Part shown: piece by piece, positions 3,791 to 37,195 of the stretch
Position numbering within the stretch: the stretch's first letter is position 1
How the letters are laid out: every line of letters begins with the position of its first letter
Origin: Haliotis rufescens
Taxonomy: Eukaryota
DNA: 64,000 nt
Assembly (NCBI RefSeq): GCF_023055435.1
Contig: NW_025963890.1
Coordinates: 33,914,001 to 33,978,000, forward strand
Direction: 5' to 3'
The notes under the pieces: generated by a model
Told to the model about the DNA's origin: nothing
Databases searched by the model: none
What the model saw: the letters and a program-made list of their open reading frames with translations, nothing else
Program-made: the position numbers and the translations under genes

Positions 3791-4164
3791 ATAACATGCA
3801 AACAGATATTATCCCCACCCTATAATATACATTTTACATTTATGCCAATTGGATTCTCCCTGGGGTCCGGCCTTGCCTCTGGAGACTGAGATCCTGGATC
3901 ATAACATGGAAATGGTTCAGATCTTTATGCTATATTCATATCTAGAGAAATACATGTTCATGCTGTCAGATTTGTCATCCACCCATTTTAAATGCTGACA
4001 GAATCAAAATTACGAAATATTTGCAGTATTATATACATGTACAATGCAAATGTATATTTTGTCATGATTGCATAAATATACAGGCCTCTTGTTTTCTTTC
4101 TCTCACTCCCCTCTCCTCTAGTCATTGGTCAGTAAGTAATAACCTATGTAATTTCTCATTTCAG

Positions 4165-4230
4165 GAAAGGAGAATTGAGGAAGTGCGGAAGAACAAGAGT
4201 TCTCTGCAGTCCACAGGTGTTGATGCCTGA
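4165..4230 (+). CDS. Probable terminal coding exon of an upstream gene (ERRIEEVRKNKSSLQSTGVDA*), product unknown
   Basis: Acceptor atttctcatttcag| followed by a phase-0 open frame to TGA. About 2.2 kb of UTR-like unique sequence follows, with AATAAA clusters near 6405. Confidence 0.45.
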   Translation, partial: ERRIEEVRKNKSSLQSTGVDA

Positions 4231-7019
4231 GCATGTGCTTGGTGACCAGTGGTCAGTTTCTGCTATTGTCCTGAGGCCAGCATCTCTGGTCACCTCCTGA
4301 CCACCAAGGAAGACATACACACACTTAATGGAGTCTGAGTTGCTACTCTGTCAGCCAGTGACAGCAGCATTTATAATATTATTGTTTATTTGACTACATG
4401 ATTCCAGCTCTTCATTTATCTGTATAGTGCTGTTCGTAAGGCATAGAAGTTAATCAACTCAGTTGTTTTTGAGTTGGACATGTTAAACCTGATGAAAATG
4501 CTGTAAAGTGATACCAGTTGGATGCCCTCTCCCTCCCTCGTTTTACACTGTCGTCTGTGGACACACAATTATTTCAGTACAGGTGTATTGCTGACTTGAA
4601 TCTCCGTCTGTATGAATCTCTTTCTCTGTCTGTATTACTCTACAACTACTTTTTGCTTGTTCTGGACTTATTGTCCATCTTGGTGTTAATGAAAGAAGTG
4701 CAAATTTGTCATGTATTTCATACTGCCATTTTTATTATCATCCACAAGCTATGCATTATTTTTTCGTCAACCTAGATGATAGAAGGATTTCATACGCATG
4801 AAAGATTGTGTGCAAGCATTTCATCAGTAATAATTATTGTAGCCCTCCATCTCTCCACCATTCATTCCGTTCATGTATTGCCATGCCCAAGTTGTAGCTT
4901 TTATAGTCAACTTTTTAGTACAAGGTCAATTTGCGTGCTTTAAGAGGACAATCAACAGTATTGTAGTTAGTGGCGACATGCGTCTATTGCAGATGTTTTA
5001 TCACTTGCCACCATTTCAGCATTGAAGGTTTCAATAATTGTTCACAAAACATCCAGCTCCTCATCAACCTGCAGCTGATTCAAACATGGATTATCTTGCC
5101 AACAAGCATGTTCTAATTTTTCACTCTGTGTGTATGTTGAAGTTAGAATACGCTGACAGTTCATTGTCCCGACATGTTTTCTAAAATTGATTAAACTTCC
5201 TTGAAACTGACCTTTTTATGAAACTCCATTTTATTGCAAGATTAATGCGTGATTAATGTGAATCCTTTTTAGTGTTTGGCAGTGATGAAGTAACATTGTG
5301 TGAGTGTCTCTGCTCAAGACGCATGTTACCACAAGATTGTATCATACGAGGAGTAGACCGGCAGTAGTCTAGTCAGCAGGCAATGTAGCCACTTTCAGTA
5401 GCACTGATAACGTCCCTTGTACATCCGAACAAGACTTTATCTTTACAGGGATGATGCCAGCACACTTGTATTGTGTAAAACCCGGCGGGTGACTAATTGA
5501 TGGTTTGGAACACAGAGTGTTAAGGATCTATAAAGTGCTGAGTACAGGTTTTGTATGATGGACTGCTGTTGCAAAGTGTACTATGAACCATGTGCTAATG
5601 TGCGAGCTACGCTTGTTGCACCAACATGTATGTACGCCAGATTGTTGATTGTTACGCACAATGTTCAGAACTGTGTTATGCCAGTGGGACCAAGATGTGA
5701 TTTTGTTTTTGTGCATCATAATTTGCAAAGGCCCCTTGCTTGTTTTTTCAGCATTTTGGAACTTAGTACATGTGAATAAAAATTTGGTTACTTGCCTTCT
5801 AATTACGCCGTTTGTTATTGCTTCAGTATGTCTGAAAATACACCAAGATGGATACAGAGTGGTTGTGCTGGACACTAAGGTTTGGAATGTGCATCTGCCA
5901 GTGTCTCTCAATGCATGTTAAGTTGTTTTTAACAATTAACACCTCTGAAGCAGCCTTACATACCTGATGTATGTGGAACAACTCACAGCATACATTACAC
6001 TCAAGGATAAGGCCATTGTTTGAAGTAACTAAACTATGTAACTGGTTTGATATCCAGCCAACATTGAAAGGAATGGGTATAATAGGAAGATGATTTGTTT
6101 GTATTGCTGCTTAATTGGCAATACTCCAGCTACATGTATGTGAAGGCGGTCTGTGAATAGTCAAGTCTGGCCCAGAAACTCCTGTGATTGAATGCAATCA
6201 ACCAAGTCACAGCTCTAACTGCCCAAGCCATTTAGACGCCTCTTAAGACAAGCACATCTATAGATTGCTGGGTAGCTCCTAGACACCAAGGATGGGAGCA
6301 AGATGAACGTGAATGTGTATTTAATGCTGTAAATGGTTTTCAATACTGTCAACTACAAATAAGATGCAGCTGCTCTCTATTATGGTGATTGTGAATGTTT
6401 ACATAAATAAATAAATGTCTCCCCAGTGTATAGATGGCAACAACCATGCGTGGAGTTCAAAACGCAGCCGACTGACTGTTGTTTACAAACAAGTGATGAC
6501 TGACCTGACGCCAAATACTCTTACCCCTGCTCAAATATTTTCCTTGTTTGTCAATTTGAATTTCTGTTTCATTACAATTATCTCAAACCAATCTGATCAA
6601 ACAACCAGAATGGTAGATTCTAAATTTATTTAAGAAACATAGTCAGTCGTAAACATTCACTATGATCGCTTTCCCCAAGACGTAAACAAAAGCATAAACA
6701 TGACTACATTAGGGGTCAGAGGGCAAATTTCAAGCTTAGGGACGAAAAATCAAAGGGAAACAACTCTCTATTAAGCTGTTTCCTTTCACAGCCAATAGTT
6801 TCCAGGGGAGGGTGCGCTTGCGCTACATTGCGCAGCCTATCCAGGGAGGTGCCGTTGTACAAGACAACCTTAGCGCTACGGCTGTCTAAGTCTGCGATAA
6901 GGATGCACAGCTCCTGGTTTAGCTGCAGACGTCCCAGGACACTTTAACCATAGCGAAACAACATGGATATAAACACAATGAAATAAAGTACAAGCAGTGT
7001 TGTTTTAGAATCCACAGAA

Positions 7020-7255
7020 TTCTGACACCCCTGGGCATTCCGAGTAAGAATTGCAGGTCCCCAGCAACCTATGCTATTAGTGGCGACCGAATGGATCGGG
7101 GTGTCCAGCTCGGTGACTTGGTTGAATTGCATTGCGGCGTAGTCCAGTTGCGTGGATCGATGCTCAGGATATCGATCACTGGATTGTCTAGTCCATACTC
7201 GATTATTTACTGACAGCCGTCATGTTGCTCGAATATTAAAACAACAAACAACATT
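7020..7255 (+). mobile_element. Dispersed SINE-like repeat, family A (degenerate)
   Basis: Reverse complement of the copies at 20495, 30935 and 32675 (gatcactggattgtctagtccatactcgattatttac...gaatatt...aaacaac). Confidence 0.7.
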
Positions 7256-8549
7256 ATCCTGACTTGAACTGTGAATGGATTAGCCTGGGTCTCGACGACT
7301 TATATGTATTTGGAATGGTAGGCATTAGCTGGCTACCAGCCATTGGAAGAAGAATATCACTTATGGATATGTGATGTTTTTGTCTCAGTGTCAATATAAC
7401 TATTTTTGAGTGAGATGTTGAGGTATCATAGGACACTTGGCAACATTTGTAGTGTACAGTACGAAATGGGGTTGAACATGGCCTGTTTTTATGTTCCTAT
7501 GATGTTTCTCACAAACCTCTATTAATTATTGGCAATAACTATCTACACTCGTGACCTACAGTGTCGCTTCGCGCAGTGAAGAGATTCATGACATAGGGCA
7601 GGCCATCACCGGGGGACAGACGGCTTATTTCCTTCAGCACATACTCCTCGTCCGAAAGTATACCCCTGTATATTAGATGTGACTGTGTGGTGCCATCATT
7701 GATCTAAATGTGATGTTAGGACATGGTATAGTTGTACACATTCTACATGTACGTGTACGGACATACACTTTTTTTTTGTAAAAGCCACGAAGCCCTGCAG
7801 CTCGCCTTCACTGGTAAGTATTTGTAGGTGGTAAACATTTAGGTTAGCTGGTTAAAATCTAGATTTAAACATTCAACGTCTATCATTTATACAACACCAG
7901 TCACGTGATATTAAATACCCAAAGGATCTCAAAAATGTATTTGGGACTGGGGAAAAGGTTCTGGCACACTTCGGCCAGCTTAAATGTATGGGCGTGGAAT
8001 TTTCTTTTTCGTTAACTCTTTTATACCTTCAGAAGAAAACTAAATGCAGTTTAGTGAGTTGATCATTTTATTGCCAAATGACACATGATATAAATTATAC
8101 AAATCGCAATACATAACAAAGGTAATTTGTAATAAACAACAGTGACACAACTGGTCCCAAAAAGTGCACCGGAGTTGAATCACTCCACACGAGACATCTG
8201 CCCGACTGAATCACCCCTCTGTGCGTCTCTACCTGTCCGGCCCCACAGACAACATGACTGGGTTCTGTCTGGGATACTTGTGACGAAACGACTCATGTAT
8301 CTACCACGTAACTCTGTATACTTCACCAACGGGAAAATGAAATGGCATATTTACAATAATGAAGAAAACATATCCCGTCAATGTTGCAGTTTGATCTCAA
8401 ATGGTCGTACGTGAAGAAACAGACGTTATTGGGCTCTGTGTTTATTTCAAGTTCTGAATAAAATTAATTATCTGATTAGCATAATCCCCTTTTTATGAAA
8501 TATGCAATATGTGAAAATATTATATTATACCAAGACAGTGTAATGTTGA

Positions 8550-8792
8550 CCGCTCTGAGTGGTTAGCGATAGTAGACAGATGTCGGACCATACGAGAGAC
8601 TGCTTGCACGGAGTATTTCCGAATTGTTGACATGCGTACATGGGAATTTACTTTGTCGCGTATCATGTTGCCCACAGAGTGATACTTCAGTAGAAATAAT
8701 CAAGTAGGCAGGCAGCCGCGACCAGTTGGATGTCTACAATGTCGTCAAACCCTGACGGGATGTTAACACTCACTCACTCACTCACTCACTCA
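8550..8792 (+). mobile_element. Degenerate SINE-like element ending in (ACTC)n tail
   Basis: A-box-like gagtggttagc at the 5' end and gttaac(actc)n at the 3' end, the same tail type as other SINEs in the window. Confidence 0.4.
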
Positions 8793-9526
8793 GTCCACAT
8801 ATGATCAAAGTGTTCCGAGTGCAAATATGTTCCGAATAGAAAAGGTGATATATCTGTGAAAAAAGGCGCTGATATATACTCTACGATTACATCGTTCACG
8901 AAGCAAAGCACCATTTGGGTTGTTTTTGACCATAGTTTTAAAGATTTTAAGCTCCGATTCACATATCTTTATGCTGCGGTTAACAATTAGTTACTATAAT
9001 CTACATATGTTAAGTAACACGACTGCAGATACAACACAGACAAATTCACCTAGTTCACCTAGTACCAGAGTGTTCTTGGAATATTGATATAACAGCAGCA
9101 CACCGTCCTTGCAATGGCAAACATACTGTGTATCCCTCTGCTTATGTTTGAACCAGACATTATGTCAAAGTAAGATATCAACGTGCACATAGGCGACAGA
9201 TGCGACTAGACGGTAAATGACGAAATGGTCTTTGAGGCTCGAGCCGGGCACATCTGCCGCCACAAATGTCCTGTCCGTATCACTGGCATGCGAGGGTATC
9301 GTTGATGGTGATGTTCAAGATTTTTCCAGCGCTCACGGTGGAGCCGACTTCGCACTTGGAGCAACAATGAAGGTCCGTCTTGTATATCTATTTCTGCCAC
9401 GTTTCACCTAATGTTCTAAACTGGTAATAGTAGGTGCGACATATTATTTGCATGTGTTACATGAGTCCCTGAATCTTGCATAGCGTTTTCGGAAGAAGGT
9501 GGTAAACATGGAGACGCTGTTTGTTT

Positions 9527-9603
9527 CTACCGTTGGAAGAAGACAGCGAGCAAGGCAAGGCAGATGCAGCCAAGGAAAGAACAGTTCACAAATGATGCCG
9601 AGT
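9527..9603 (-). CDS. Exon 4 (last) of GPI-anchored RGM-N/neuritin-like protein: (D)SASFVNCSFLGCICLALLAVFFQR*
   Basis: Strong acceptor ttggttctttttcag|. Phase 1 matches exon 3. Small residues followed by a hydrophobic tail and stop fit a GPI signal. Confidence 0.75.
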
Positions 9604-10083
9604 CTGAAAAAGAACCAAATACAAGATTGATACTGTATTTCTATTCAACAATACAACAAGAACGTACACCAATTGTTGAAAAAGTCACGGCGCAATAAGT
9701 GACGAGTTGTAAAACACTACAGCATGTAATCAGTACGGAAGATTCAAGTATGTTTACAATTTGTGAAGCTTGTCAGCACCTGGACATGGAATGTGGTAGT
9801 CATCATCGACATCGTACTTGCAATGGTTTAACCTATAGGGACAGGTCCGCCCTGACTATTATCCTTGGTTTACCAGCACCATATATTGTCCTTCGGGCTT
9901 TTCTCAAATATTATATATGATAGGTTTCTATTTCTCACCCCCGAAGGACCATAGAGGTTCTTTTACCATACTTCGCATACTACAATGATAGTTGTTTTCA
10001 ATTCCGATTTTTCAAGCCAGAACAAGCTGCGAGGCTTTGGAGTCTTTATGGACGTGGTTGGTATAGATATAGTATCTACTTAC

Positions 10084-10199
10084 CGCACTGGGGGTATTTA
10101 TCCTTGGCAGTGTCGATGTCATTCTGCACCCACTCGTTCTGCTTTGGGGTACATGCTCCCTTGACGTTCTCCAGGCAGTCTATCTTTTGTCGTATGTAC
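10084..10199 (-). CDS. Exon 3 of the same gene: (W)YIRQKIDCLENVKGACTPKQNEWVQNDIDTAKDKYPQC
   Basis: Acceptor cctctctatcgctgcag| and donor |gtaagt. 116 bp, phase 2 to 1, open frame. Confidence 0.8.
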
Positions 10200-13100
10200 C
10201 TGCAGCGATAGAGAGGATTCTGTAACACCACAACACAAGCAGTTAATCTTCTCTCATGTGTACCTACACAGGGAGACTCATTTAACACCACAACACAAGC
10301 AGTCAACCTCCCCATGTGTACCTACACAGGGAGACTCATTTAACACCACTACACAAGCCGTCAACCTCCCCATCTGTACATACACAGGGAGACTCATTTA
10401 ACACCACAACACAAGCAGTCAACCTCCCCATATGTACCTACACAGGGAGACTCATTTAACACCACAACACAAGCAGTCAACCTCCCTTATGTGTACCTAC
10501 ACAGGGAGACTCATTTAACACCACAACACAAGCAGTCAACCTCCCCATGATTACCTACACAGGAAGACTCATTTAACACCACAACACAAGCAGTCAACCT
10601 CCCCCATGATTACCTACACAGGAAGACTCATTTAACACCACAACACAAGCAGTCAACCTCCCTTATGTGTACCTACACAGGGAGACTCATTTAACACCAC
10701 AACACAAGCAGTCAACCTCCACCATGTGTACCTACACAGGAAGACTCATTTAACACCACAACACAAGCAGTCAACCTCCCTTATGTGTACCTACACAGGG
10801 AGACTCATTTAACACCACAACACAAGCAGTCAACCTCCACCATGTGTACCTACACAGGAAGACTCATTTAACACCACAACACAAGCAGTCAACCTCCCCC
10901 ATGATTACCTACACAGGAAGACTCATTTAACACCACAACACAAGCAGTCAACCTCCCCATGGTTACCTACACAGGGAGACTCATTTAACACCCCAACACA
11001 AGCAGGCAACCTCCCCCATGTGAACCTATACAGGGAGACTCATTTAACACCACAACACAAGCAGTCAACCTCCCCATGTGTACCTACACAGGGAGACTCA
11101 TTTAACACCACAACACAAGCAGTCAACCTCCCCATATGTACCTACACAGGGAGACTCATTTAACACCACAACACAAGCAGTCAACCTCCCCATGTGAACC
11201 TATACAGGGAGACTCATTTAACACCACAAAACAAGCAGTCAACCTCCCCCATGTGTACCTACACAGGGGGACTTATTTAACACCACAACACAAGCAGTCA
11301 ACCTCCCCATATGTACCTACACAGGGAGACTCATTTAACACCACAACACAAGCAGTCAACCTCCCCCATGATTACCTACACAGGAAGACTCATTTAACAC
11401 CACAACACAAGCAGTCAACCTCCCTTATGTGTACCTACACAGGGAGACTCATTTAACACCACAACACAAGCAGTCAACCTCCCCCATGATTACCTACACA
11501 GGAAGACTCATTAACACCACAACACAAGCAGTCAACCTCCACCATGTGTACCTACACAGGGAGACTCATTTAACACCACAACACAAGCAGTCAACCTCCA
11601 CCATGTGTACCTACACAGGGAGACTCATTTAACACCACAACACAAGCAGTCAACCTCCCTTATGTGTACCTACACAGGGAGACTCATTTAACACCACAAC
11701 ACAAGCAGTCAACCTCCCCCATGATTACCTACACAGGAAGACTCATTTAACACCACAACACAAGCAGTCAACCTCCCTTATGTGTACCTACACAGGGAGA
11801 CTCATTTAACACCACAACACAAGCAGTCAACCTCCCCCATGATTACCTACACAGGAAGACTCATTAACACCACAACACAAGCAGTCAACCTCCACCATGT
11901 GTACCTACACAGGGAGACTCATTTAACACCACAACACAAGCAGTCTACCTCCACCATGTGTACCTACACAGGGAGACTCATTTAACACCACAACACAAGC
12001 AGTCAACCTCCCCCATGTGAACCTATACAGGAAGACTCATTTAACACCACAACACAAGCAGTCAACCTCCCTTATGTGTACCTACACAGGGAGACTCATT
12101 TAACACCACAACACAAGCAGTCAACCTCCCCATATGTACCTACACAGGGAGACTCATTTAACACCACAACACAAGCAGTCAACCTCCCTTATGTGTACCT
12201 ACACAGGGAGACTCATTTAACACCACAACACAAGCAGTCAACCTCCCCCATGATTACCTACACAGGAAGACTCATTTAACACCACAACACAAGCAGTCAA
12301 CCTCCTTTATGTGTACCTACACAGGGAGACTCATTTAACACCACAACACAAGCAGTCAACCTCCACCATGTGTACCTACACAGGAAGACTCATTTAACAC
12401 CACAACACAAGCAGTCAACCTCCACCATGTGTACCTACACAGGAAGACTCATTTAACACCAACAACACAAGCAGTCAACCTCCCTTATGTGTACCTACAC
12501 GGGGAGACTCATTTAACACCACAACACAAGCAGTCAACCTCCCCATATGTACCTACACAGGGAGACTCATTTAACACCACAACACAAGCAGTCAACCTCC
12601 CCCATGATTACCTACACAGGAAGACTCATTTAACACCACAACACAAGCAGTCAACCTCCCCATGGTTACCTACACAGGGAGACTCATTTAACACCCCAAC
12701 ACAAGCAGGCAACCTCCCCCATGTGAACCTATACAGGGAGACTCATTTAACACCACAACACAAGCAGTCCACCTCCCCATGTGTACCTACACAGGGAGAC
12801 TCATTTAACACCACAACACAAGCAGTCAACCTCCCCATATGTACCTACACAGGGAGACTCATTTAACACCACAACACAAGCAGTCAACCTCCCCATGTGA
12901 ACCTATACAGGGAGACTCATTTAACACCACAAAACAAGCAGTCAACCTCCCCCATGTGTACCTACACAGGGGGACTTATTTAACACCACAACACAAGCAG
13001 TCAACCTCCCCATATGTACCTACACAGGGAGACTCATTTAACACCACAACACAAGCAGTCAACCTCCCCCATGATTACCTACACAGGAAGACTCATTTAA

Positions 13101-16100
13101 CACCACAACACAAGCAGTCAACCTCCCTTATGTGTACCTACACAGGGAGACTCATTTAACACCACAACACAAGCAGTCAACCTCCCCCATGATTACCTAC
13201 ACAGGAAGACTCATTAACACCACAACACAAGCAGTCAACCTCCACCATGTGTACCTACACAGGGAGACTCATTTAACACCACAACACAAGCAGTCAACCT
13301 CCACCATGTGTACCTACACAGGGAGACTCATTTAACACCACAACACAAGCAGTCAACCTCCACCATGTGTACCTACACAGGGAGACTCATTTAACACCAC
13401 AACACAAGCAGTCAACCTCCCCCATGATTACCTACACAGGAAGACTCATTTAACACCACAACACAAGCAGTCAACCTCCCTTATGTGTACCTACACAGGG
13501 AGACTCATTTAACACCACAACACAAGCAGTCAACCTCCCCCATGATTACCTACACAGGAAGACTCATTAACACCACAACACAAGCAGTCAACCTCCACCA
13601 TGTGTACCTACACAGGGAGACTCATTTAACACCACAACACAAGCAGTCTACCTCCACCATGTGTACCTACACAGGGAGACTCATTTAACACCACAACACA
13701 AGCAGTCAACCTCCCCCATGTGAACCTATACAGGAAGACTCATTTAACACCACAACACAAGCAGTCAACCTCCCTTATGTGTACCTACACAGGGAGACTC
13801 ATTTAACACCACAACACAAGCAGTCAACCTCCCCATATGTACCTACACAGGGAGACTCATTTAACACCACAACACAAGCAGTCAACCTCCCTTATGTGTA
13901 CCTACACAGGGAGACTCATTTAACACCACAACACAAGCAGTCAACCTCCCCCATGATTACCTACACAGGAAGACTCATTTAACACCACAACACAAGCAGT
14001 CAACCTCCTTTATGTGTACCTACACAGGGAGACTCATTTAACACCACAACACAAGCAGTCAACCTCCACCATGTGTACCTACACAGGAAGACTCATTTAA
14101 CACCACAACACAAGCAGTCAACCTCCACCATGTGTACCTACACAGGAAGACTCATTTAACACCAACAACACAAGCAGTCAACCTCCCTTATGTGTACCTA
14201 CACGGGGAGACTCATTTAACACCACAACACAAGCAGTCAACCTCCCCATATGTACCTACACAGGGAGACTCATTTAACACCACAACACAAGCAGTCAACC
14301 TCCACCATGTGTACCTACACAGGGAGACTCATTTAACACCACAACACAAGCAGTCAACCTCCCCCATGATTACCTACACAGGAAGACTCATTAACACCAC
14401 AACACAAGCAGTCAACCTCCACCATGTGTACCTACACAGGGAGACTCATTTAACACCACAACACAAGCAGTCAACCTCCCCCATGATTACCTACACAGGA
14501 AGACTCATTTAACACCACAACACAAGCAGTCAACCTCCCTTATGTGTACCTACACAGGGAGACTCATTTAACACCACAACACAAGCAGTCAACCTCCCCC
14601 ATGATTACCTACACAGGAAGACTCATTAACACCACAACACAAGCAGTCAACCTCCACCATGTGTACCTACACAGGGAGACTCATTTAACACCACAACACA
14701 AGCAGTCTACCTCCACCATGTGTACCTACACAGGGAGACTCATTTAACACCACAACACAAGCAGTCAACCTCCCCCATGTGAACCTATACAGGAAGACTC
14801 ATTTAACACCACAACACAAGCAGTCAACCTCCCTTATGTGTACCTACACAGGGAGACTCATTTAACACCACAACACAAGCAGTCAACCTCCCCATATGTA
14901 CCTACACAGGGAGACTCATTTAACACCACAACACAAGCAGTCAACCTCCCTTATGTGTACCTACACAGGGAGACTCATTTAACACCACAACACAAGCAGT
15001 CAACCTCCCCCATGATTACCTACACAGGAAGACTCATTTAACACCACAACACAAGCAGTCAACCTCCTTTATGTGTACCTACACAGGGAGACTCATTTAA
15101 CACCACAACACAAGCAGTCAACCTCCCCCATGATTACCTACACAGGAAGACTCATTTAACACCACAACACAAGCAGTCAACCTCCCTTATGTGTACCTAC
15201 ACAGGGAGACTCATTTAACACCACAACACAAGCAGTCAACCTCCCCCATGTGAACCTACACAGGGAGACTCATTTAACACCACAACACAAGCAGTCAACC
15301 TCCACCATGTGTACCTACACAGGAAGACTCATTTAACACCACAACACAAGCAGTCAACCTCCACCATGTGTACCTACACAGGAAGACTCATTTAACACCA
15401 ACAACACAAGCAGTCAACCTCCCTTATGTGTACCTACACGGGGAGACTCATTTAACACCACAACACAAGCAGTCAACCTCCCCATATGTACCTACACAGG
15501 GAGACTCATTTAACACCACAACACAAGCAGTCAACCTCCACCATGTGTACCTACACAGGGAGACTCATTTAACACCACAACACAAGCAGTCAACCTCCCT
15601 TATGTGTACCTACACAGGGAGACTCATTTAACACCACAACACAAGCAGTCAACCTCCCCCATGATTACCTACACAGGAAGACTCATTTAACACCACAACA
15701 CAAGCAGTCAACCTCCACCATGTGTACCTACACAGGGAGACTCATTTAACACCACAACACAAGCAGTCAACCTCCACCATGTGTACCTACACAGGGAGAC
15801 TCATTTAACACCACAACACAAGCAGTCAACCTCCCCCATGTGAACCTATACAGGAAGACTCATTTAACACCACAACACAAGCAGTCAACCTCCCTTATGT
15901 GTACCTACACAGGGAGACTCATTTAACACCACAACACAAGCAGTCAACCTCCCCATATGTACCTACACAGGGAGACTCATTTAACACCACAACACAAGCA
16001 GTCAACCTCCCTTATGTGTACCTACACAGGGAGACTCATTTAACACCACAACACAAGCAGTCAACCTCCCCCATGATTACCTACACAGGAAGACTCATTT

Positions 16101-18485
16101 AACACCACAACACAAGCAGTCAACCTCCCTTATGTGTACCTACACAGGGAGACTCATTTAACACCACAACACAAGCAGTCAACCTCCCCCATGATTACCT
16201 ACACAGGAAGACTCATTTAACACCACAACACAAGCAGTCAACCTCCCTTATGTGTACCTACACAGGGAGACTCATTTAACACCACAACACAAGCAGTCAA
16301 CCTCCCCATATGTACCTACACAGGGAGACTCATTTAACACCACAACACAAGCAGTCAACCTCCCCATGGTTACCTACACAGGGAGACTCATTTAACACCC
16401 CAACACAAGCAGGCAACCTCCCCCATGTGAACCTATACAGGGAGACTCATTTAACACCACAACACAAGCAGTCAACCTCCCCATGTGTACCTACACAGGG
16501 AGACTCATTTAACACCACAACACAAGCAGTCAACCTCCCCATATGTACCTACACAGGGAGACTCATTTAACACCACAACACAAGCAGTCAACCTCCCCAT
16601 GTGAACCTATACAGGGAGACTCATTTAACACCACAAAACAAGCAGTCAACCTCCCCCATGTGTACCTACACAGGGGGACTTATTTAACACCACAACACAA
16701 GCACTCAACCTCCCCCATATTTACCTACCCAGGGAGACTCATTTAACACTACAACACAAGCAGTCTACCTCCACCATGTGTACCTAACAGGGAGACTCAT
16801 TTAACACCACAACACAAGCAGTCAACCTCCCCCATGTGAACCTACACAGGGAGACTCATTTAACACCACAACACAAGCAGTCAACCTCCACCATGTGTAC
16901 CTACACAGGGAGACTCATTTAACACCACAACACAAGCAGTCAACCTCCCTTATGTGTACCTACACAGGGAGACTCATTTAACACCACAACACAAGCAGTC
17001 AACCTCCACCATGTATACCTACACAGGGAGACTCATTTAACACCACAACACAAGCAGTCTACCTCCACCATGTGTACCTACACAGGGAGACTCATTTAAC
17101 ACCACAACACAAGCAGTCTACCTCCACCATGTGTACCTACACAGGGAGACTCATTTAACACCACAACACAAGCAGTCAACCTCCACCATGTGTACCTACA
17201 CAGGAAGACTCATTAACACCACAACACAAGCAGTCAACCTCCCTTATGTGTACCTACACAGGGAGACTCATTTAACACCACAACACAAGCAGTCAACCTC
17301 CCCATATGTACCTACACAGGGAGACTCATTTAACACCACAACACAAGCAGTCTACCTCCACCATGTGTACCTACACAGGGAGACTCATTTAACACCACAA
17401 CACAAGCAGTCAACCTCCACCATGTGTACCTACACAGGAAGACTCATTAACACCACAACACAAGCAGTCAACCTCCCTTATGTGTACCTACACAGGGAGA
17501 CTCATTTAACACCACAACACAAGCAGTCAACCTCCACCATGTGTACCTACACAGGGAGACTCATTTAACACCACAACACAAGCAGTCTACCTCCACCATG
17601 TGTACCTACACAGGGAGACTCATTTAACACCACAACACAAGCAGTCAACCTCCCCATATGTACCTACACAGGGAGACTCATTTAACACCACAACACAAGC
17701 AGTCAACCCCCCCCCCCATGGTTACCTACACAGGGAGACTCATTTAACACCACAACACAAGCAGTCTAGCTCCACCATGTGTACCTACACAGGGAGACTC
17801 ATTTAACACCACAACACAAGCAGTCAACCTCCCTTATGTGTACCTACACAGGGAGACTCATTTAACACCACAACACAAGCAGTCTACCTCCACCATGTGT
17901 ACCTACACAGGGAGACTCATTTAACACCACAACACAAGCAGTCTACCTCCCCATGGTTACCTACACAGGGAGACTCATTTAACACCACAACACAAGCAGT
18001 CAACCTCCCCATGATTACCTACACAGGGAGACTCATTTAACACCGCAACACAAGCAGTCAACCTCCCCCATGTGAACCTATACAGGGAGACTCATTTAAC
18101 ACCACAACACAAGCAGTCAACCTCCCCCATGTGAACCTATACAGGGAGACTCATTTAACACCACAACACAAGCAGTCAACCTCCCTTATGTACCTACACA
18201 GGGAGACTCATTTAACACCCCAACACAAGCAGTCAACCTCCCCATATGTACCTACACAGGGAGACTCATTTAACACCCCAACACAAGCAGGCAACCTCCC
18301 CCAAATGTGTACCTACACAGGGAGACTCATTTAACACCCCAACACAAGCAGGCAACCTCCCCCAAATGTGTACCTACACAGGGAGACTCATTTAACACCC
18401 CAACACAAGCAGGCAACCTCCCCCAAATGTGTACCTACACAGAGAGACTCATTTAACACCCCAACACAAGCAGGCAACCTCCCTC
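10200..18485. repeat. ~58-59-bp satellite, ~140 copies, with 1703-bp (29-mer) higher-order duplication; fills intron 2
   Basis: Monomer tgtgtacctacacagggagactcatttaacaccacaacacaagcagtcaacctccccca. Variant landmarks and repeat ORFs recur at exactly +1703 (11136/12839, 11429/13132, 11782/13485, 12076/13779). Confidence 0.97.
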
Positions 18486-18494
18486 CATTATACC

Positions 18495-18628
18495 CTCTCT
18501 CACACACACACACATATACACTCACTCTGTCACACACACACATACACACTCACTCCCTGTCAAACACATACACACACTCACTCACTTACTCTCTGTCACA
18601 CACACACACACACACTCACTGTCACACA
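18495..18628. repeat. Imperfect (CA)n/(CACT)n microsatellite abutting an assembly gap
   Basis: Direct reading. Confidence 0.9.
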
Positions 18629-18796
18629 NNNNNNNNNNNNNNNNNNNNNNNNNNNNNNNNNNNNNNNNNNNNNNNNNNNNNNNNNNNNNNNNNNNNNNNN
18701 NNNNNNNNNNNNNNNNNNNNNNNNNNNNNNNNNNNNNNNNNNNNNNNNNNNNNNNNNNNNNNNNNNNNNNNNNNNNNNNNNNNNNNNNNNNNNNNN
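18629..18796. other. Assembly gap (N-run)
   Basis: Run of n. Confidence 1.
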
Positions 18797-18843
18797 GACA
18801 TCCGCCCCCTCTCATGACGTATGATCCCAAACAGCAGTCCTAC

Positions 18844-18958
18844 CAGCAGAAGGTTCCCTCATCAATGCCTGTACGTGATGCTTGTCTGGAGAACACTTGG
18901 TTACATTCAGTCGCCTTGATACACTGCGATACACCGCGGACGGTGCTCATGAGGTGGA
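18844..18958 (-). CDS. Exon 2 of the GPI-anchored protein gene: (V)HLMSTVRGVSQCIKATECNQVFSRQASRTGIDEGTFC(W)
   Basis: Acceptor gtttatgtttcag| and donor |gtagga. 115 bp, phase 1 to 2. The terminal TG joins the first G of exon 3 to give Trp. Confidence 0.78.
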
Positions 18959-19602
18959 CTGAAACATAAACGTGACATGCACATGACTGTGTAGGAAGCA
19001 TGCCAGGCTTTTAAGATACACACAAGGAAATAACTAAGCACCCTGTGTTTGCGACAATCTATGTGCACCAACGTGGTATCACAACATGGGCACGTCGTGG
19101 TTACACTCGCAACTGATTCGAAGGATTTGTGAGTTGTCTTCATGAGATTACAATGAACGTTCTGGGGCTTAGTAATTGTTGTTCCCATTTTGACTCATTA
19201 CAGTACTGATGAAATACTGTGTTATTCACGTACTTATTGACCACTGCCATCTTTATCTGTGCTTTCTTTCGTCAAGAGCCTCATCTTCCGCGAGTACTGC
19301 CATGTTGTTAGACATACATGGTCGAAGAAACGGGGACTGCTTCATTTCCAGGTGTATAGAATAATAACGATCGGTTTTTGTAAAATCAGTAAACCTGAGG
19401 TTTGTACACGACGTCAAGCTAAATGTTTATTCCTAAGTGTGAGAGAGTGAGTAGAGTGTTTCAATTATGTCGCGACGGGTCAGATTAATGTGCGGGGAAC
19501 TAATGGAGTGGACGTTGACATCTTCAGTGAAACACAAGAGTGCCTATATGGTATTTGTGAGGTGAAAAGGGGTTTAACGTCGCGTTCAAGAATATTGCAC
19601 TT

Positions 19603-19766
19603 NNNNNNNNNNNNNNNNNNNNNNNNNNNNNNNNNNNNNNNNNNNNNNNNNNNNNNNNNNNNNNNNNNNNNNNNNNNNNNNNNNNNNNNNNNNNNNNNNN
19701 NNNNNNNNNNNNNNNNNNNNNNNNNNNNNNNNNNNNNNNNNNNNNNNNNNNNNNNNNNNNNNNNNN
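19603..19766. other. Assembly gap (N-run)
   Basis: Run of n. Confidence 1.
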
Positions 19767-19960
19767 TGCCGATTTTATAGTGCTAGCCCATTGAGAAACC
19801 ATGCCGTAGTTTAACACGAATACCCAATTCAGACACAGTGTACTGACTCCGAGGAGTCAGTCCTTGTTTCAACCACTTATGCCGAGCGCCAGGCAGGGTA
19901 ACAACAAGTACCATCTTTTAGCGTCTTTTGGTATGATGCGGCCGGACATCGAACCTCACG
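19767..19960 (-). mobile_element. tRNA-headed SINE fragment (Meta/V-SINE-like core); related fragment at ~24560-24640
   Basis: agcgccaggcagggtaacaacaagt...ttttggtatga is shared with ~24580. A reverse B-box (tcgaacc) lies at ~19950. Confidence 0.5.
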
Positions 19961-20494
19961 AGTCGGTCCGGTATGGAACTGACATGTATCAGTAGATCCT
20001 GGCTCGAATGGGCACAACGATTCGGTTTGTAGAGACGCAGTTCAAGTTTGTTATGCATCCTATCTCACGATATGAAATTACGTTTCAACCAGGCCCCGTA
20101 AGGATTCCGGGCCAGAATAGGTACCCAGTCTCTCCATGCTGTAAGAGCCCACTAATGATCACTGGCTAGTTACACCGTGTCACCGCTGCTGATCATGTAT
20201 GTGATATCGTACTCAGACGACGTGGATCGTTGCTGATGTTGTTGACCCTACCCCTTATATACATGCCGTCTTGGAATATCACTGCGGCGCACCACAACAT
20301 GCATATACTACAACCGCTGGTTCTTCACAGGAACTTCAACTATCAGTTCTCCACATTTCGCTACTACGGGAATCGAACCAAGTTGATATTGTGATACGAG
20401 AGGTGGGGTCCAGGTTAACACGTGGTTCCTGCAACGAGGTATGGCACTATCTGTTGTCTGTTAGATGAGGGGCGGCGCCTAGAGATCTCCCATC

Positions 20495-20702
20495 CAACCA
20501 TCAATATTCCAGCTTTATGACGGCGGTTCATAAATAGTCGAGTCTGGACCAGACAATCCAGTGACTGACATCATGAGCATCGATTCAGGCAATTTGGATA
20601 TGACATGCAATCAAGCCTTCCCACTCAATCCACTTACTCGCCTCTTATGACAAGCATCGGCTGCTGTGGACCGGCATCCTTACCCGGGATCCCTACGGGT
20701 CT
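20495..20702 (-). mobile_element. SINE-like repeat family A; an oppositely oriented degenerate copy lies at ~20095-20300
   Basis: aatattccagct...cgagtctggaccagacaatccagtga...catgagcatcgat...cgcctcttatgacaagcat is shared with 30935 and 32675. Confidence 0.75.
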
Positions 20703-20742
20703 TATCCTGAGAGTTTGATGGCAAACCACAAGAGAGATTTAT

Positions 20743-22337
20743 GGCCAGGTTCACTACAGTGCCGATTATGGCTCCCGTTTGAGATCAGACAGCGCTACGA
20801 CCCGAAAAGTGAAAAAGTCGGATTACTATCCTCAATGACCGATATGGAATGTCCTATCATTGTCTGAACGCAGTCGTATACGTGCTACCCCCATCACAAC
20901 AAACTAGTTCTCAATACTTTCGTGAAAATGTTGTCGAACGGGCTCCAACTGTGTATGAACGTAGTGGACGTAGTAACAACTATCGACAGTCTTTTTACGA
21001 ACTTCATGGACGGGCTCGGACGGGGAGGGTGCTCTAGAACTTTGAGTCTGCTAAAAATTGTATCCCGTCCATCCCGTTCTGCAATTAGTCGGACTGACAA
21101 CGTACTTAAAACGAGAAAGACGTATTACGAACAGAATTGCCGTACTTCGAACGGAATTGCCGCACTTCGAACCTACTAGGGACGTGTTACGACGAGGTGC
21201 AGTCGGACATAAATTTCAGTACGTGTGCACACCGACAGGGTCGACTTCTCTTTGGAGGCATGATGTGTACAGCTCGGGGCCCTGAACTTGAATGAAGACT
21301 GGCTACAACGCGCTCGGTACCCATAGGAGTCGAGCCAGGACGGGCCAGGACGCGAATACACACGCACTTGGGACGAGATGAGGACGTATTGCGAACGAGT
21401 TGGTCGGGTTAAGAATTAGTTAGAACTGGCTTGGACGTATTGTGGACGAGATAGAGCGAGGTTGAGCTGGTTAAGAACGGGTTCAGAACGGCTACGGACG
21501 TGCTCGAACTGCTTCGAAACGTTGTCGGGATGAGGTGAAAGGGCACTTTTACACATCTGAACTGGATATATACAAGGACTGCAGACTGGCTAAGAACGAG
21601 ATAAGAACGAGATAGACGTATTGAGGACTGCTTATGAACGAACTAGCATCGTATTTTACGCCAAACTACGCGTTCTACCGTGATCACAGCCCGTTCTAGT
21701 ATTTTGTTTAGAACGGGGTAGAACGGGATAGAACTACTTTAGTGTGATGGTAGCATTCGTAACAGTCCTACGGATCGAGAAAGGTCCAGAGAGGTCGCGG
21801 CCAAGCACTCCCGTAACATTCGGGAAACTCAGCCGATTATGTCTAGTCGGACTACAATCGTGACTATGCCGTGACAGATTCTGCTGTATCGGATCAAAAT
21901 CGTAACAATGTCCTGTGTTGTCTGGACGGTGTCTTGTGGATCGGAACGCTGGCGTGATGAACGGGCATGAATTGTTCATTGCCGTTTCTTGTTGCTTGAG
22001 TCCAGATTGCGTCCAGATCTTGCCGAATGCGAACCGTCTTTGTCGGTTCACTGTCCGATCACTGTCGGATCTATGTCGGATCGCATTCGGGAGAATAGGG
22101 ACACCGTCGGGACAGATTCGGTTGTTATTTACCATGCGGAAGAAACAAATCAGATCAGATTCGGATTGAAAACGGGAGAATCGGGCCGAATTCGGCTGGG
22201 ACGCTTTCTGAACAATATATCTGATTGTGAATTTCCCGCCACAAATCACAGGATCTTGATCAGACTTTTGACAAATTTTTATGGGGAATGCTCCTATCAT
22301 GGACGGCAGTAAAAATCCTGAATGCGTGACTGAGCCC
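20743..22337. mobile_element. Non-autonomous TIR element (MITE, PIF/Harbinger-like ends) containing a nested second MITE at ~20882-21757
   Basis: Outer imperfect TIRs are ggccaggttcac...aaaaagtcggattactatcct versus the reverse complement gggctcagtcac...caaaagtctgatcaagatcct. Inner TIRs are tgctacccccatcacaacaaactagttct versus the reverse complement tgctaccatcacactaaagtagttct. CpG-rich; no transposase. Confidence 0.55.
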
Positions 22338-24056
22338 ATATTTGTCACACAAATATTTCACCATACTGATAAAATTGTCACGTGTGTAAATAGTGAATTG
22401 TACAGGCTTTTTCGAGCTGACAGTTCGTGTACAATAAGTGTATTTGTTTGCAAGCCCATTCAGCTTTAAATCCCACACACGCCGCTGTGGACACACAATT
22501 AATACTTTTACAACACCTTGCTCATCAGTTCATCACACAAACATCCTACACCTCCACACTAATCGTTATCATGCTTATGACTGCTTACACAAGTAAAGTT
22601 ACGATTGTATAAACTTTAAGTGATATTTTCAGCATGTAGATAGACATTAGTATTGAAGTTCGAGGATGTATCCACTTGGTCCTAAATAAAGGTGTTCATA
22701 TCAATCCCGTCATTATTTATCAGCGCTACACTCTGACGCAGACATTTTTATCTAAACGTGGGTGGTAACAGGCTTTTCAAACCCCGACTTCTACAACGCC
22801 AACTGCACTGGCCTACTAGCTCCATGATTAGTAGCACAGCCTGCAGATTTAGCAATAGGCTAATCAGAGCCCTTCACCTACACGACAGTGAACACTTACA
22901 AGCTGACCTAGCTAGTGCTATAGGTGTGGCCAACATTCATCGATTTTATGGTGAGGCTTTTCACCCTTTAGTCGTGTTATATCGAGGGTTTATATTGTGT
23001 CCGAGGTTGCCAGGAGATAGACTTAAGACGTAAAAAATTACATTTTCGATTACGTCCACAGCATCTAAACCTAATGCATTTTATCTGGATTAAAAGTTTT
23101 ATCCCGAATTTTAATAGTTTGCGGAAATATTAGGACAACCTTATAAATCATCGATCGGAACATATTTGATTTCGTTGATAAATATTCAATAATTCATCTA
23201 TATTTCACGTCCGTCGTGAAGTCGCCTTGACTTGCAGCTGAAAAGTACAGACAATATTACCATAGACGCGATACTTGTGGTTAATATTTGGATGTTTCAG
23301 AAATAAGGCGGATATATCTGTAGTGTGCTGCATTGTAGGATACGGTGACTTGAAGTGCGTCGCTGATAGTACCTGGTTGACCGCATGGCGCTCATATTTC
23401 AAAACAGTAATGTGAAAGGGTGGATTTATGTTGGTATATTCAACTCTTCAGCATACCGAGGACATTTTACAGTGTAGACTCACAACTGTACAGTACATGA
23501 CGTATCACGTGATCAAGAAATGTACATACGCTGACAGGTGATACGCCCATTAGTGACGAATGGTTATGGCTAAAAATAACTTGAGCAAAATTCCGCCTAA
23601 ACGAGCACAAGCGAGCACGATTAATCATAATAGTGACAGAACATGCAGTTTTTAGGAAATGCAAGGAGAGAGAAACATTCTCTTGGCTCCTAATGTAGCG
23701 ACAATGCAACCCATCACCACCGCCTACAATTACTTGTCTGTTACGACAGGTATTTCTGACTTTTTAAACGTGTCATCCCGTAAATATGAATAACGACTTT
23801 CAGATCAACCACAAGTCACGAGACACACTGTTACTCCGTGCCAAGCTGGTCAGGGCCCGTGTTTTAGTGGAAGTATAGCGACAATGTTCCCACAGCTAAA
23901 ACGCTAAACAGAAACATCACCTGCCGTTACACTTGGCTACACTTCTCAAGTACGGGCAGGACAACAACGACTAGACTGGGTCAGGACGTTTATAGTAATA
24001 TATACACAATGAAGAAATGTCGTGATCATCGTCAGACACAATACAAGATGGCTTAC

Positions 24057-24087
24057 CTGAACACAGTATTGCCAAAACGTATTTCAT
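24057..24087 (-). CDS. Exon 1 (coding) of the GPI-anchored protein gene: MKYVLAILCS(V), signal peptide N-part
   Basis: aaaATGaaatacgttttggcaatactgtgttcag|gtaagc. Phase 1 matches exon 2, giving the signal-peptide-like MKYVLAILCSVHLMSTVRG. Confidence 0.7.
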
Positions 24088-35610: not shown

Positions 35611-35729
35611 TCACTTTCCCTGACATACCCCTCTGTCACCATTTTTGACAGTCATTACAGTTCCTGACACTCTGTTGGTTGGTTTGTTGTTTAACACCGC
35701 ACTCAGCAATATTCCAGCTATATGACGGT

Positions 35730-37195
35730 CTTGACACTCTACTTGACACACTACATGACATACTACTTGACACACATGACACTCTATATGACACACTACA
35801 TGACATACTACTTGACACACATGACACTCTACATGACACACAACATGACATACTACTTGACACACATGACACTCTACATGACACTACATGACATACTACT
35901 TAACACACATGACTATACATGACACACTACATGACATACTACTTGACACTCTACATGACACACTACATGACATACTACTTGAAACACATGACACTCTACA
36001 TGACACTACATGACATACTACTTGACACACATAACACTATATGACACACTACATGACATACAACTTGACACACATGACACTCTACATGGCACATTACATG
36101 ACATACTGCTTGACACACATGACACTCTATATGACACACTGCATTACATACTACTTGACACACATGACACTCTACATGACACACAACATGACATACTACT
36201 TGACACACATGACACTCTACATGACACTACATGACATACTACTTAACACACATGACACTACATGACACACTACATGACATACTACTTGACACTCTACATG
36301 ACATACTACATGACATACTACTTGACACACATGACACTCTACATGACACACTACATGACATACTACTTGACACACATAACACTATATGACACACTACATG
36401 ACATACAACTTCACACACATGACACTCTACATGACACACTACATGACATACTACTTGACACACATGACACTCTACATGGCACATTACATGACATACTGCT
36501 TGACACACATGACACACTACATGACATAGTACTTGACACACATGCCACTAAATAACATACTACTTGACACGCATGACACTCTACATGACACACTACATGA
36601 CATACTGCTTGACACACATGACACACTTCGTGACATACTACTTGACACACATGATACTACATGACATACTGCTTGACACACATGACACACTTCATGACAC
36701 TCTACATGACACACTACATGACTTACTACTTGAAACACATGACACTCTACATGACACACATGACATACTACTTGACACACATAACACTATATGACACACT
36801 ACATGACATACAACTTGACACACATGACACTCTACACGACACACTACATGACATACTACTTTACACACATGACACTCTACATGGCACATTACATGACATA
36901 CTGCTTGACACACATGACACACTACATGACATACTACTTGACACACATGACACTACATTACATACTACTTGACACACATGACACTCTACATGACACACTA
37001 CATGACATACTGCTTGACACACATGACACACTTCATGACATACTACTTGACACACATGACACACTACATGACATACTACTTGACACACATGACACACTTC
37101 ATGACACTCTACATGACACACTACATGATTGACTACTTGGCACACATGACACTCTACATGACACACTACTTGGCACTCTACATGACACACTGCTT
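35730..37195. repeat. Complex AG-free minisatellite (gacatactacttgacacacatgacactctacatgacacactacat) running up to the exon-5 acceptor
   Basis: Direct reading; related to the upstream array through tgacacactacatgaca. Confidence 0.95.

What the first reader, a model, noticed from the sequence alone, without database searches (positions are those of the whole stretch)
10172..18485. 8-kb intronic satellite is an amplified copy of the gene's own 3' splice junction: ~140 AG|GT sites
Seen in sequence: on the transcribed (minus) strand the monomer reads gtacacatggggaggttgactgcttgtgttgtggtgttaaatgagtctccctgtgtAG|GTac. The true junction reads ...attaactgcttgtgttgtggtgttacagaatcctctctatcgctgcAG|GTacatacgacaaaagatagactgc. 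Each monomer therefore equals ~25 nt of exon-3 start plus ~35 nt of intron end, and the unit nearest the exon is intermediate in sequence. Every unit carries a branch-like TTGAC, a short pyrimidine run and TAG|GT. Some variants read AG|GTAATC or AG|GTAACC, which are better donors. Established: duplication of AGGT-containing segments is a proposed intron-gain route, and AG|GT ratchet points mediate recursive splicing. Inference: the expansion may be tolerated because use of a decoy acceptor regenerates a donor. Alternatively, array length could tune splicing efficiency of the gene.
Basis: partly seen in the sequence, partly recalled or inferred. Interest (0 to 1): 0.78.

Follow-up and report, generated by a model that had tools for sequence, protein, structure and literature searches.

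The report
Splice-acceptor-derived minisatellite in abalone intron
An 8-kb run of about 140 head-to-tail 59-base copies fills an intron of a small abalone gene and descends from that gene's own intron-exon junction, but the gene is still spliced normally, and repeats of this kind ("mirage" minisatellites) are already known.

Summary
A 59-bp tandem array (10223-18488, 140.6 copies) fills intron 2 of a four-exon minus-strand gene. That gene matches a public Haliotis rufescens protein (LOC124111881) exactly. 139 of 140 unit boundaries read AG|GT, as does the real acceptor.

The first 25-28 nt of exon 3 are homologous, in register, to the start of the last, degenerate unit (21/28). None of 110,229 control 25-mers scores as well. 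The last 23 nt of the intron are not demonstrably related to the unit. The unit's core occurs nowhere else in the 1.33-Gb assembly (129 of 129 matches lie here). The exon start encodes residues conserved in two other Haliotis species. So the array came from the junction, not the reverse.

RNA-like contigs from three runs of two species join exon 2 to exon 3 at the authentic acceptor, and none joins exon 2 to a unit. Donors regenerated after decoy use would be weak: U1 pairing of -2.6 to -5.3 against -7.7 to -11.0 kcal/mol for the real donors.

This is an acceptor-side "mirage" minisatellite, a kind described in amphioxus. Here it occurs in a mollusc at an extreme copy number. This scan found the same kind twice before on other DNA of this genome. 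Recursive splicing is unsupported but not excluded.

The parts
24057..24087 (-). Exon 1 coding part (ATG at 24087; MKYVLAILCS, then phase-1 donor CAG|GTAAGC)
   Evidence: Sequence and ORF list. Identical to the start of the public protein P0001.
18844..18958 (-). Exon 2 (115 nt), ending ...CCTTCTGCTG|gtagga
   Evidence: Sequence and translation, matching P0001 residues 12-48. Its 3' end is read as the loose end of the RNA contigs that cover exon 3.
10200..18843 (-). Intron 2 (8,644 nt). It holds a masked N stretch, a TG/GA-rich microsatellite, the array and the terminal unit.
   Evidence: Bounded by the exon 2 donor and the acceptor confirmed by RNA contigs in X1, X5 and X14.
18629..18796 (.). 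Masked N stretch (168 nt), left alone
   Evidence: It hides the far end of the intron, so the distal breakpoint of the array cannot be reconstructed.
18501..18628 (-). Compound (TG)n / GAGT-rich microsatellite abutting the distal end of the array
   Evidence: Tandem Repeats Finder rows with periods 2, 26-32; sequence.
10264..18488 (-). 59-bp tandem array, about 140 units, built of block duplications
   Evidence: period 59, 140.6 copies, 92%. (38 distinct unit sequences among 138 segments). (exact repeats of 939 bp at offset 1703 and 736 bp at offset 1059). (the 30-nt core with up to 3 mismatches: 129 in the genome, 129 in the window).
10200..10263 (-). Terminal, degenerate 64-nt unit. 10263..10239 is exon-like, 10238..10223 is identical to the unit core, and 10222..10200 is the working polypyrimidine tract plus CAG acceptor.
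   Evidence: Two contigs of organism B (10165-10274, 2-3 differing letters) bridge it, so it predates that species split.
10172..10199 (-). First 28 nt of exon 3, homologous in register to the start of the repeat unit; encodes (W)YIRQKIDC
   Evidence: 21/28 ungapped. 0 of 110,229 control 25-mers reach the score against the terminal unit. The residues are conserved in H. asinina and H. rubra proteins.
10084..10199 (-). Exon 3 (116 nt), donor GCG|GTAAGT
   Evidence: Translation. The 38-aa peptide finds P0001 at 100%. The joint 9603->10084 appears in X1, X5 and X14.
9604..10083 (-). Intron 3 (480 nt, GT..AG)
   Evidence: Joint 'skips 480, CT..AC' in 3 of 3 RNA-like runs.
8054..9603 (-). Exon 4: hydrophobic tail and stop (9603..9527), then 3' UTR
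   Evidence: Translation. RNA contigs at depth 105-273 run down to 8054-8065.

Best explanation
This is an acceptor-side splice-junction ('mirage'-type) minisatellite. A segment of about 64 bp spanning the end of intron 2 and the first 25-28 nt of exon 3 of a small Haliotis-restricted gene was duplicated in tandem. The upstream copies, now intronic, were multiplied by unequal exchange or slippage in blocks of many units. They were homogenised into a 58-59-bp unit, about 140 copies and 8.3 kb in all. The copy next to the exon stayed outside the homogenisation and kept a working branch region, polypyrimidine tract and CAG acceptor. The spliceosome uses only this last, authentic acceptor in the dominant mRNA, and the whole array is removed as intron. 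The roughly 139 upstream AG|GT sites are pseudo-sites. They are somewhat weaker acceptors (T instead of C at -3, fewer pyrimidines, an AG only 13 nt upstream). Except for the last few, they have no usable donor downstream to define an exon. If used with the exon 3 donor, they would give a stop within 4-7 codons. What is shown: the array, its register with the junction, its locus specificity, its presence in related species, and normal splicing. What is inferred: the order of events, why the decoys stay silent, and the neutrality of the array.
For: Array and AG|GT counts. In-register homology of the exon start with the terminal unit: 21/28; 2 of 127,190 window 25-mers reach 19/25, namely the unit itself and the exon start; 0 of 110,229 control 25-mers and 0 of 424 AG|GT-anchored ones reach the observed global score. 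The homogenised monomer start also resembles the exon start, more weakly (46 of 110,229; 2 of 424). Locus specificity: 39 of 39 DNA matches lie in the array, and the 30-nt core has 129 matches in 1.33 Gb, all 129 in the window. The exon is ancestral: FCW[YF][IL]RQKIDCL is conserved in the H. asinina and H. rubra proteins, which are 63-64% identical overall. Splicing: the loose end at 10205 in X1, X5 and X14 reads the 3' end of exon 2. The aligner ran 6 nt over because CTGCTG resembles CTGCAG (1 differing letter). So the junction is exon 2|10199 in 3 of 3 RNA-like runs from organisms A and C. The public prediction P0001 equals the 4-exon model. Array in relatives: organism B contigs bridge acceptor and terminal unit, with array bins at depth 850-9777 against about 26-30 for unique sequence; organism C has an 89-nt unit contig. 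Recent block growth: exact repeats of 939 and 736 bp. Decoys weaker: 11/20 against 13/20 pyrimidines, T against C at -3, nearest upstream AG at 13 against 20 nt, and stops within 4-7 codons. [quoted passage not shown] These do not disturb splicing, and their boundary units are excluded from homogenisation (PMC3087553, passages).
Against: The unit's last 19 nt and the intron's true last 23 nt are not significantly alike, so the intron half of the supposed founding duplicate cannot be shown. The difference is uneven: 0 of 16 positions differ in the core against 11 of 24 columns in the tract. That needs an added assumption, either selection keeping the real tract or partial gene conversion of the terminal unit. 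The monomer consensus against the exon is not significant without the register constraint (969 of 2000 shuffles). The distal end of the array begins inside the exon-like part of a unit, next to a microsatellite and a masked stretch. The two ends are therefore not in the same phase, as a simple duplication would predict. Silence of the decoys rests on assembled contigs, which drop rare forms.
Confidence: 0.8

Rival explanations
1. The decoy AG|GT sites are used as acceptors, and each use regenerates a donor, so the intron is removed stepwise (recursive splicing). Alternatively, array length tunes the gene's output.
For: Every unit boundary is a juxtaposed AG|GT, and exon 2 ends in G, so a GT-initial donor would be recreated. 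The decoy acceptors are not hopeless: a pyrimidine run of 7 and TAG. AGGT sites able to act as either kind of site, and their link with tandem repeats, are in print (PMC10809524, abstract and passages). Unit-only contigs are present in RNA-like runs at depth 14-21.
Against: Regenerated donors pair poorly with U1: -2.6 to -5.3 kcal/mol, against -11.0, -7.7 and -9.0 for the gene's three real donors. 0 of 139 listed boundaries has G at +5, and they match 4-7 of 9 consensus positions. 0 of 3 RNA-like runs has a contig joining exon 2 to a unit, while 3 of 3 have the authentic junction. The intron is only 8.6 kb. As I recall, described ratchet points sit in much longer introns and have near-consensus donors.
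Confidence: 0.07
2. Array first. A pre-existing intronic satellite supplied the acceptor and the first 25 nt of exon 3 (exonisation of a unit), rather than the exon seeding the array.
For: The same in-register homology fits either direction. The gene is found only in Haliotis: 3 proteins at E<=1 and 1 representative at E<=0.001. A young exon boundary is therefore conceivable.
Against: The exon start encodes W-Y/F-I/L-R-Q-K-I-D-C including a conserved cysteine. This is one of the best conserved stretches among three species whose proteins are only 63-64% identical overall. The unit exists nowhere else in the genome that could have donated it. The terminal unit, not the exon, is the intermediate, decayed copy.
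Confidence: 0.08
3. Chance resemblance or an assembly artefact.
For: The unit's tract against the true tract is not significant. Array lengths in assemblies can be wrong.
Against: 0 of 110,229 control 25-mers reach the terminal-unit/exon score. Units and the bridging terminal unit are seen in independent runs from four studies and three organisms.
Confidence: 0.02

Closest known systems
'Mirage' minisatellites of amphioxus (Adh3, globins BflGb6/BflGb9, TnC, PGBD5)
   Same: Tandem repeats whose unit spans an exon-intron boundary. BflGb6 is the same side as here (3' end of the intron plus 5' part of the exon). Many units keep AG/GT, regular splicing is undisturbed, and there is concerted evolution inside the cluster with the boundary unit excluded (PMC3087553 passages; PMC3902484 passage).
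   Different: Those cases have 3-6 units of 150-160 bp (globins) or units of 10-72 bp (Adh3), in a cephalochordate. Here there are about 140 units of 59 bp (8.3 kb) in a gastropod mollusc. The unit's acceptor-proximal part has diverged beyond recognition from the working one. The founding paper (Canestro et al. 2002) was not held, so I know it only through these citations.
Human donor-side junction minisatellites: F7 IVS7 37-bp VNTR; IFI6 (6-16), CBS IVS13, LMNB2, PDGF
   Same: The first monomer spans the exon-intron boundary, so the splice site is reiterated in the intron as pseudo-sites that stay mostly or wholly silent (PMC1557585, abstract and introduction passages).
   Different: Those are on the donor side, with 5-26 copies and pseudo-sites often identical to the real site. 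The site next to the exon wins by 5'-to-3' scanning. Here the acceptor side is involved and the authentic site is the one farthest from the donor, so a different selection logic is needed (branch point to AG, exon definition).
Recursive splice sites / ratchet points (Drosophila zero-nucleotide exons)
   Same: Juxtaposed acceptor and donor, AG|GT, inside an intron (abstracts of 10.1101/006163 and PMC8605326, seen in the listing).
   Different: The regenerated donors here are weak. There is no RNA evidence for their use. The sites are a by-product of repeat origin rather than conserved single sites.
Dual-specific AGGT splice sites in tandem repeats (UBC, VCX3A) and intron gain by tandem duplication of AGGT segments
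   Same: A tandem repeat carries one AGGT per unit, and duplication of a segment with AGGT is a route to new intron sequence (PMC10809524; PMC3265369 and PMC4974935, listing and abstract starts).
   Different: In those cases the repeats are exonic and splicing between units makes or changes introns. Here the duplication lengthened an existing intron, and no new intron or isoform is seen.

Membership tests
Mirage (splice-junction) minisatellite | Head-to-tail repeats of minisatellite unit size inside a gene | tested here: met
   Period 59, 140.6 copies, 92% matches.
Mirage (splice-junction) minisatellite | The unit spans an exon-intron boundary: an exon part and an intron part, with the authentic copy at the end of the array | tested here: met
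   Exon part: 21/28 in register, and 0 of 110,229 controls reach the score. Intron part: the 16-nt core is identical, but the last 23 nt are not significantly alike. The feature is therefore met through the exon part and the register, not through the acceptor tract itself.
Mirage (splice-junction) minisatellite | Units keep AG/GT splice signals | tested here: met
   139 of 140 boundaries are AG|GT.
Mirage (splice-junction) minisatellite | Regular splicing of the mRNA is not disturbed | tested here: met
   The authentic exon 2|exon 3 junction is in 3 of 3 RNA-like runs, and 0 of 3 have a unit junction. The evidence is contigs only, so rare forms are not excluded.
Mirage (splice-junction) minisatellite | Concerted evolution inside the cluster, with the boundary unit excluded | tested here: met
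   Exact blocks of up to 939 bp occur inside the array. The terminal unit is diverged and shared with organism B.
Mirage (splice-junction) minisatellite | Length instability between alleles or in the soma | not testable with these tools
   This needs spanning long reads from several individuals.
Recursive splice site (ratchet point) | Juxtaposed 3' and 5' splice sites, AG|GT | tested here: met
Recursive splice site (ratchet point) | The regenerated 5' splice site is strong enough to be used | tested here: not met
   U1 duplex of -2.6 to -5.3 against -7.7 to -11.0 kcal/mol for the real donors; no G at +5 at any of the 139 listed boundaries. This is a heuristic that uses a recalled 11-nt U1 motif and a recalled consensus.
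Recursive splice site (ratchet point) | RNA intermediates: upstream exon joined to the site, saw-tooth intron coverage | tested here: inconclusive
   0 of 3 RNA-like runs show such a contig. Contigs cannot show rare intermediates or coverage shape.
Genome-wide satellite DNA family | The unit is present at many loci | tested here: not met
   129 of 129 genome matches of the core lie in this array. 39 of 39 DNA matches lie here too, from 1 first-look candidate.

The most novel reading that the evidence does not exclude
Splice-junction minisatellites may be a recurrent, lineage-wide feature of abalone genes. This is the third locus this scan has noted in this genome. They could be made by a process biased towards exon-intron boundaries rather than by chance placement. 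The roughly 139 pseudo-acceptors of this array could be engaged co-transcriptionally at a low level, leading to NMD or slower intron removal. In that case the unstable array length would act as a heritable dial on the output of this Haliotis-specific gene.
Probability: 0.1. Interest if true: 0.75.

Novelty: new member of a known kind. Interest (0 to 1): 0.4.

Why it matters
This locus is a clean natural experiment on 3' splice site choice. About 139 pseudo-acceptors, all closer to the donor than the real one, are skipped in the dominant mRNA of at least two species. It extends the 'mirage' class from cephalochordates and human donor-side VNTRs to a mollusc, to the acceptor side, and to a copy number roughly 5 to 20 times that of the printed cases I saw. 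It shows how an intron can gain 8 kb from its own boundary. It also warns gene predictors, because the array offers 139 false acceptors in one intron. In itself it is not a new mechanism.

Tried and rejected
**Protein family, exon by exon.** Pfam gave 0 families for the three exon peptides. With the public full-length protein, the only hit was RGM_N at E=0.017, below its cut-off, in 1 of 3 orthologues. A PDB profile search gave nothing below E=0.1.

**Paralogues.** The 35-aa exon 3 peptide finds only itself in the genome at E<=10.

**Monomer consensus against the exon without the register constraint.** Not significant (969 of 2000 shuffles). I kept this as evidence against.

**Unit tract against the true acceptor tract.** Not significant.

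**Copy number in organism B.** Not derived, because depths of piled-up contigs are not copy numbers.

**Comparing array and intron 3 depth in the RNA runs.** Rejected, because contig depths cannot rank parts of a gene.

**Literature for an acceptor-side case outside amphioxus, or any mollusc case.** The searches found none in the held library. One abalone paper reports a length-polymorphic 27-bp intronic minisatellite, with no word on junctions (PMC6905558, passages). Subscription papers are not searched, and supplements are closed. Additional files 4-7 of PMC3087553 (mirage alignments and trees) might bear on how like this array those are. MaxEnt-type splice scores were not available, so I used simple counts and U1 duplex energies.


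Full report
**What is there.** Tandem Repeats Finder reports one array at 10223-18488: period 59, 140.6 copies, 92% matches, no indels, with a 235-bp four-unit higher order. The + strand of the stretch has a GC skew of -0.40 to -0.46, so the minus strand is G+T-rich.

Read on the minus strand, I cut the array at 139 boundaries. 138 are AG|GT and one is AT|GT. One boundary that my pattern missed, inside a double segment, is also AG|GT. That gives 139 of 140, plus the real acceptor. The six letters after AG at the 139 listed boundaries are:
- GTACAC 76
- GTAATC 23
- GTACAT 18
- GTTCAC 14
- GTAACC 5
- three singletons

There are 38 distinct unit sequences among 138 segments. Variation is concentrated in the first 12 positions after the GT, and the 16-nt core is nearly invariant. 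The array grew in blocks: there are exact repeats of 939 bp at an offset of 1703 bp (29 units) and 736 bp at 1059 bp (18 units). A 301-bp probe has four 100% copies.

**The gene.** On the minus strand there is a four-exon gene:

| Part | Coordinates | Notes |
|---|---|---|
| Exon 1 | 24087..24057 | start codon at 24087 |
| Exon 2 | 18958..18844 | |
| Exon 3 | 10199..10084 | |
| Exon 4 | 9603..9527 | hydrophobic tail and stop, then a 3' UTR |

I searched the model exon by exon and did not join the exons myself.

The 38-aa exon 3 peptide, scored against 1.84 billion representatives, found one protein at E<=0.001. That protein, P0001, has 112 aa and equals the four-exon model from end to end. NCBI names it 'uncharacterized protein LOC124111881 [Haliotis rufescens]'. 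Used by id, P0001 finds only two relatives at E<=1, from H. asinina and H. rubra, at 63-64% identity. I could not place the protein family: Pfam gives only a sub-threshold RGM_N hit in 1 of 3, and PDB gives nothing.

**RNA evidence.** I had one read-laying run, on 8000-10700, with four runs kept as contigs. X1 and X5 (organism A) and X14 (organism C) behave as RNA:
- Exons and UTR have depth 105-273, against 3-6 in intron 3.
- All three carry the joint 9603->10084 (480 nt skipped, GT..AG on the minus strand).
- All three have a loose end at 10205 whose letters are the reverse complement of the 3' end of exon 2.

The aligned piece runs six letters into the intron with one differing letter, because exon 2 ends CTGCTG and the intron ends CTGCAG. 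No contig in these three runs joins exon 2 to a repeat unit. Unit-only contigs of 89 nt are present at depth 14-21. Contigs drop rare variants, so this shows the dominant form only.

**Is the unit a copy of the junction?** The last unit (10263..10200, 64 nt) matches the monomer at 38 of 41 positions over its first part. Its first 28 nt match the first 28 nt of exon 3 at 21 positions without a gap, and both begin at the first base after an AG. The controls were:
- Only 2 of 127,190 window 25-mers reach 19/25 against the terminal unit's start: the unit itself and the exon start.
- 0 of 110,229 25-mers outside the array reach the observed global score, and 0 of the 424 that follow AG and begin GT do.
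- The homogenised monomer start resembles the exon start more weakly (46 of 110,229; 2 of 424). Without the register constraint it is not significant (969 of 2000 shuffles).
- The terminal unit is the intermediate: 15 columns shared by all three, 5 with the monomer only, 4 with the exon only, 1 monomer=exon only.

The intron's last 23 nt, which are the working tract and CAG, are not demonstrably related to the unit's last 19 nt (662 of 5000 shuffles, 391 of 3384 AG-ending controls, 99 of 747 pyrimidine-rich ones). The unevenness is 0 of 16 core positions changed against 11 of 24 tract columns. I read this as the terminal unit being partly converted by its neighbours, while the real tract is held by selection. 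That is inference.

The distal end of the array starts inside the exon-like part of a unit. It is followed by a TG-rich microsatellite and a masked N stretch, which I left alone. The far breakpoint therefore cannot be read.

**Direction and specificity.**
- The 30-nt core with up to 3 mismatches occurs 129 times in the 1.33-Gb assembly, and all 129 are in this window. The reversed control pattern gives 0.
- A 301-bp DNA search gave 39 matches, all inside the array, from a single first-look candidate.
- The exon start encodes W-Y-I-R-Q-K-I-D-C, which is identical in H. asinina and reads W-F-L-R-Q-K-I-D-C in H. rubra.

So the coding exon start is old and constrained, and there is no outside source for the unit. 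The array descends from the junction.

**Age and spread.**
- Organism B (X18, single-copy depth about 26-30) has two contigs bridging exon 3, the acceptor and the whole terminal unit, with 2-3 differing letters in 110.
- Organism B's depth over the laid units is 850-9777.
- Organism C has a unit contig.
- Flanking unique sequence in B and C differs by about 3%: 36 letters in 1255 and 26 in 802.

The array and its decayed end unit therefore predate these species splits. The refutation test 'absent from orthologous introns' could only be applied to these close relatives, and there the array is present.

**Would the decoys work?** These are simple measures.

| Feature | True acceptor | Unit (decoy) |
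|---|---|---|
| Pyrimidines in the 20 nt before NAG | 13 of 20 | 11 of 20 |
| Base at -3 | C | T |
| Nearest upstream AG | 20 nt | 13 nt |

Used with the exon 3 donor, the five nearest decoys give a stop within 4-7 codons.

The donor recreated after decoy use is exon 2's CTG followed by the unit start. It pairs with the U1 5' end at -2.6 to -5.3 kcal/mol. The gene's three real donors pair at -11.0, -7.7 and -9.0. None of the 139 listed unit starts has G at +5. The U1 motif and the consensus are recalled, not taken from a call. Recursive re-splicing is thus unlikely, though not excluded. Exon definition by the strong GTAAGT donor 116 nt downstream of the real acceptor is my inferred reason why the last site wins.

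**What is known.**
- Ebner et al. [quoted passage not shown] Many units carry AG/GT, splicing is undisturbed, and boundary units are excluded from homogenisation. They credit the term to Canestro et al. 2002, which was not held.
- PMC3902484 (one passage) adds PGBD5 and TnC.
- Donor-side human cases are listed in PMC1557585 (abstract and passages): F7 IVS7, IFI6 with 25 pseudo-sites, CBS, LMNB2 and PDGF.
- AGGT sites in tandem repeats and intron creation are covered in PMC10809524. PMC3265369 and PMC4974935 I saw only as listing and abstract starts.
- My searches found no mollusc case and no acceptor-side case of this size in the held library. Supplements were closed and subscription journals are not searched.

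**Verdict.** The origin claim is supported in substance. The recursive or tuning claim is unsupported. This is a new and extreme member of a known kind, found before by this scan at two other loci of the same genome (notes s1-805550 and s1-814393, whose loci I did not re-examine).

Noticed in passing
window 2704-3780; 29669-30483; 32953-37191; 54280-55914; 56376-57587: There are five further sizeable tandem arrays in the same 64 kb: 143 bp x 7.7; 45 bp x 18; 24- and 12-bp families of over 100 copies each; 30 bp x 55; 68 bp x 18. The genome is very rich in minisatellites, which bears on how often one should span a splice junction by chance.
   Followed up: no
window 10056-10058 (intron 3): Contigs of X1 (organism A) and X14 (organism C) leave the assembly at 10056 with the same 30 loose letters. 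X18 (organism B) breaks at 10058. This points to an insertion/deletion or alternative haplotype in intron 3 relative to this assembly.
   Followed up: no
window 9527-24087, minus strand: The host gene (P0001, 112 aa) has a signal-like start, conserved cysteines and a hydrophobic tail. It has detectable relatives only in Haliotis: 3 proteins at E<=1. Its only family hint is a sub-threshold RGM_N match (E=0.017).
   Followed up: partly
window 18501-18628 and N at 18629-18796, 19603-19766: A compound TG/GAGT-rich microsatellite sits directly at the distal end of the array and may have grown out of the TGTGT of a unit. Two masked stretches lie in and just upstream of intron 2; I left them alone.
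   Followed up: no
window array, about 10 units (e.g. type F): A minority of units read TAGAC instead of TTGAC (10 of 137 aligned units have A at that column). This is the letter the exon has at the matching place. It could be an ancestral remnant or a coincidence.
   Followed up: no
window 8761-8801 and 8065: Contigs of all runs break at the (GAGT)n microsatellite at 8761-8801. The X1 contig ends at 8065 in adapter-like letters, next to an AATAAA at 8067-8072 on the minus strand, which is probably the transcript's 3' end.
   Followed up: no
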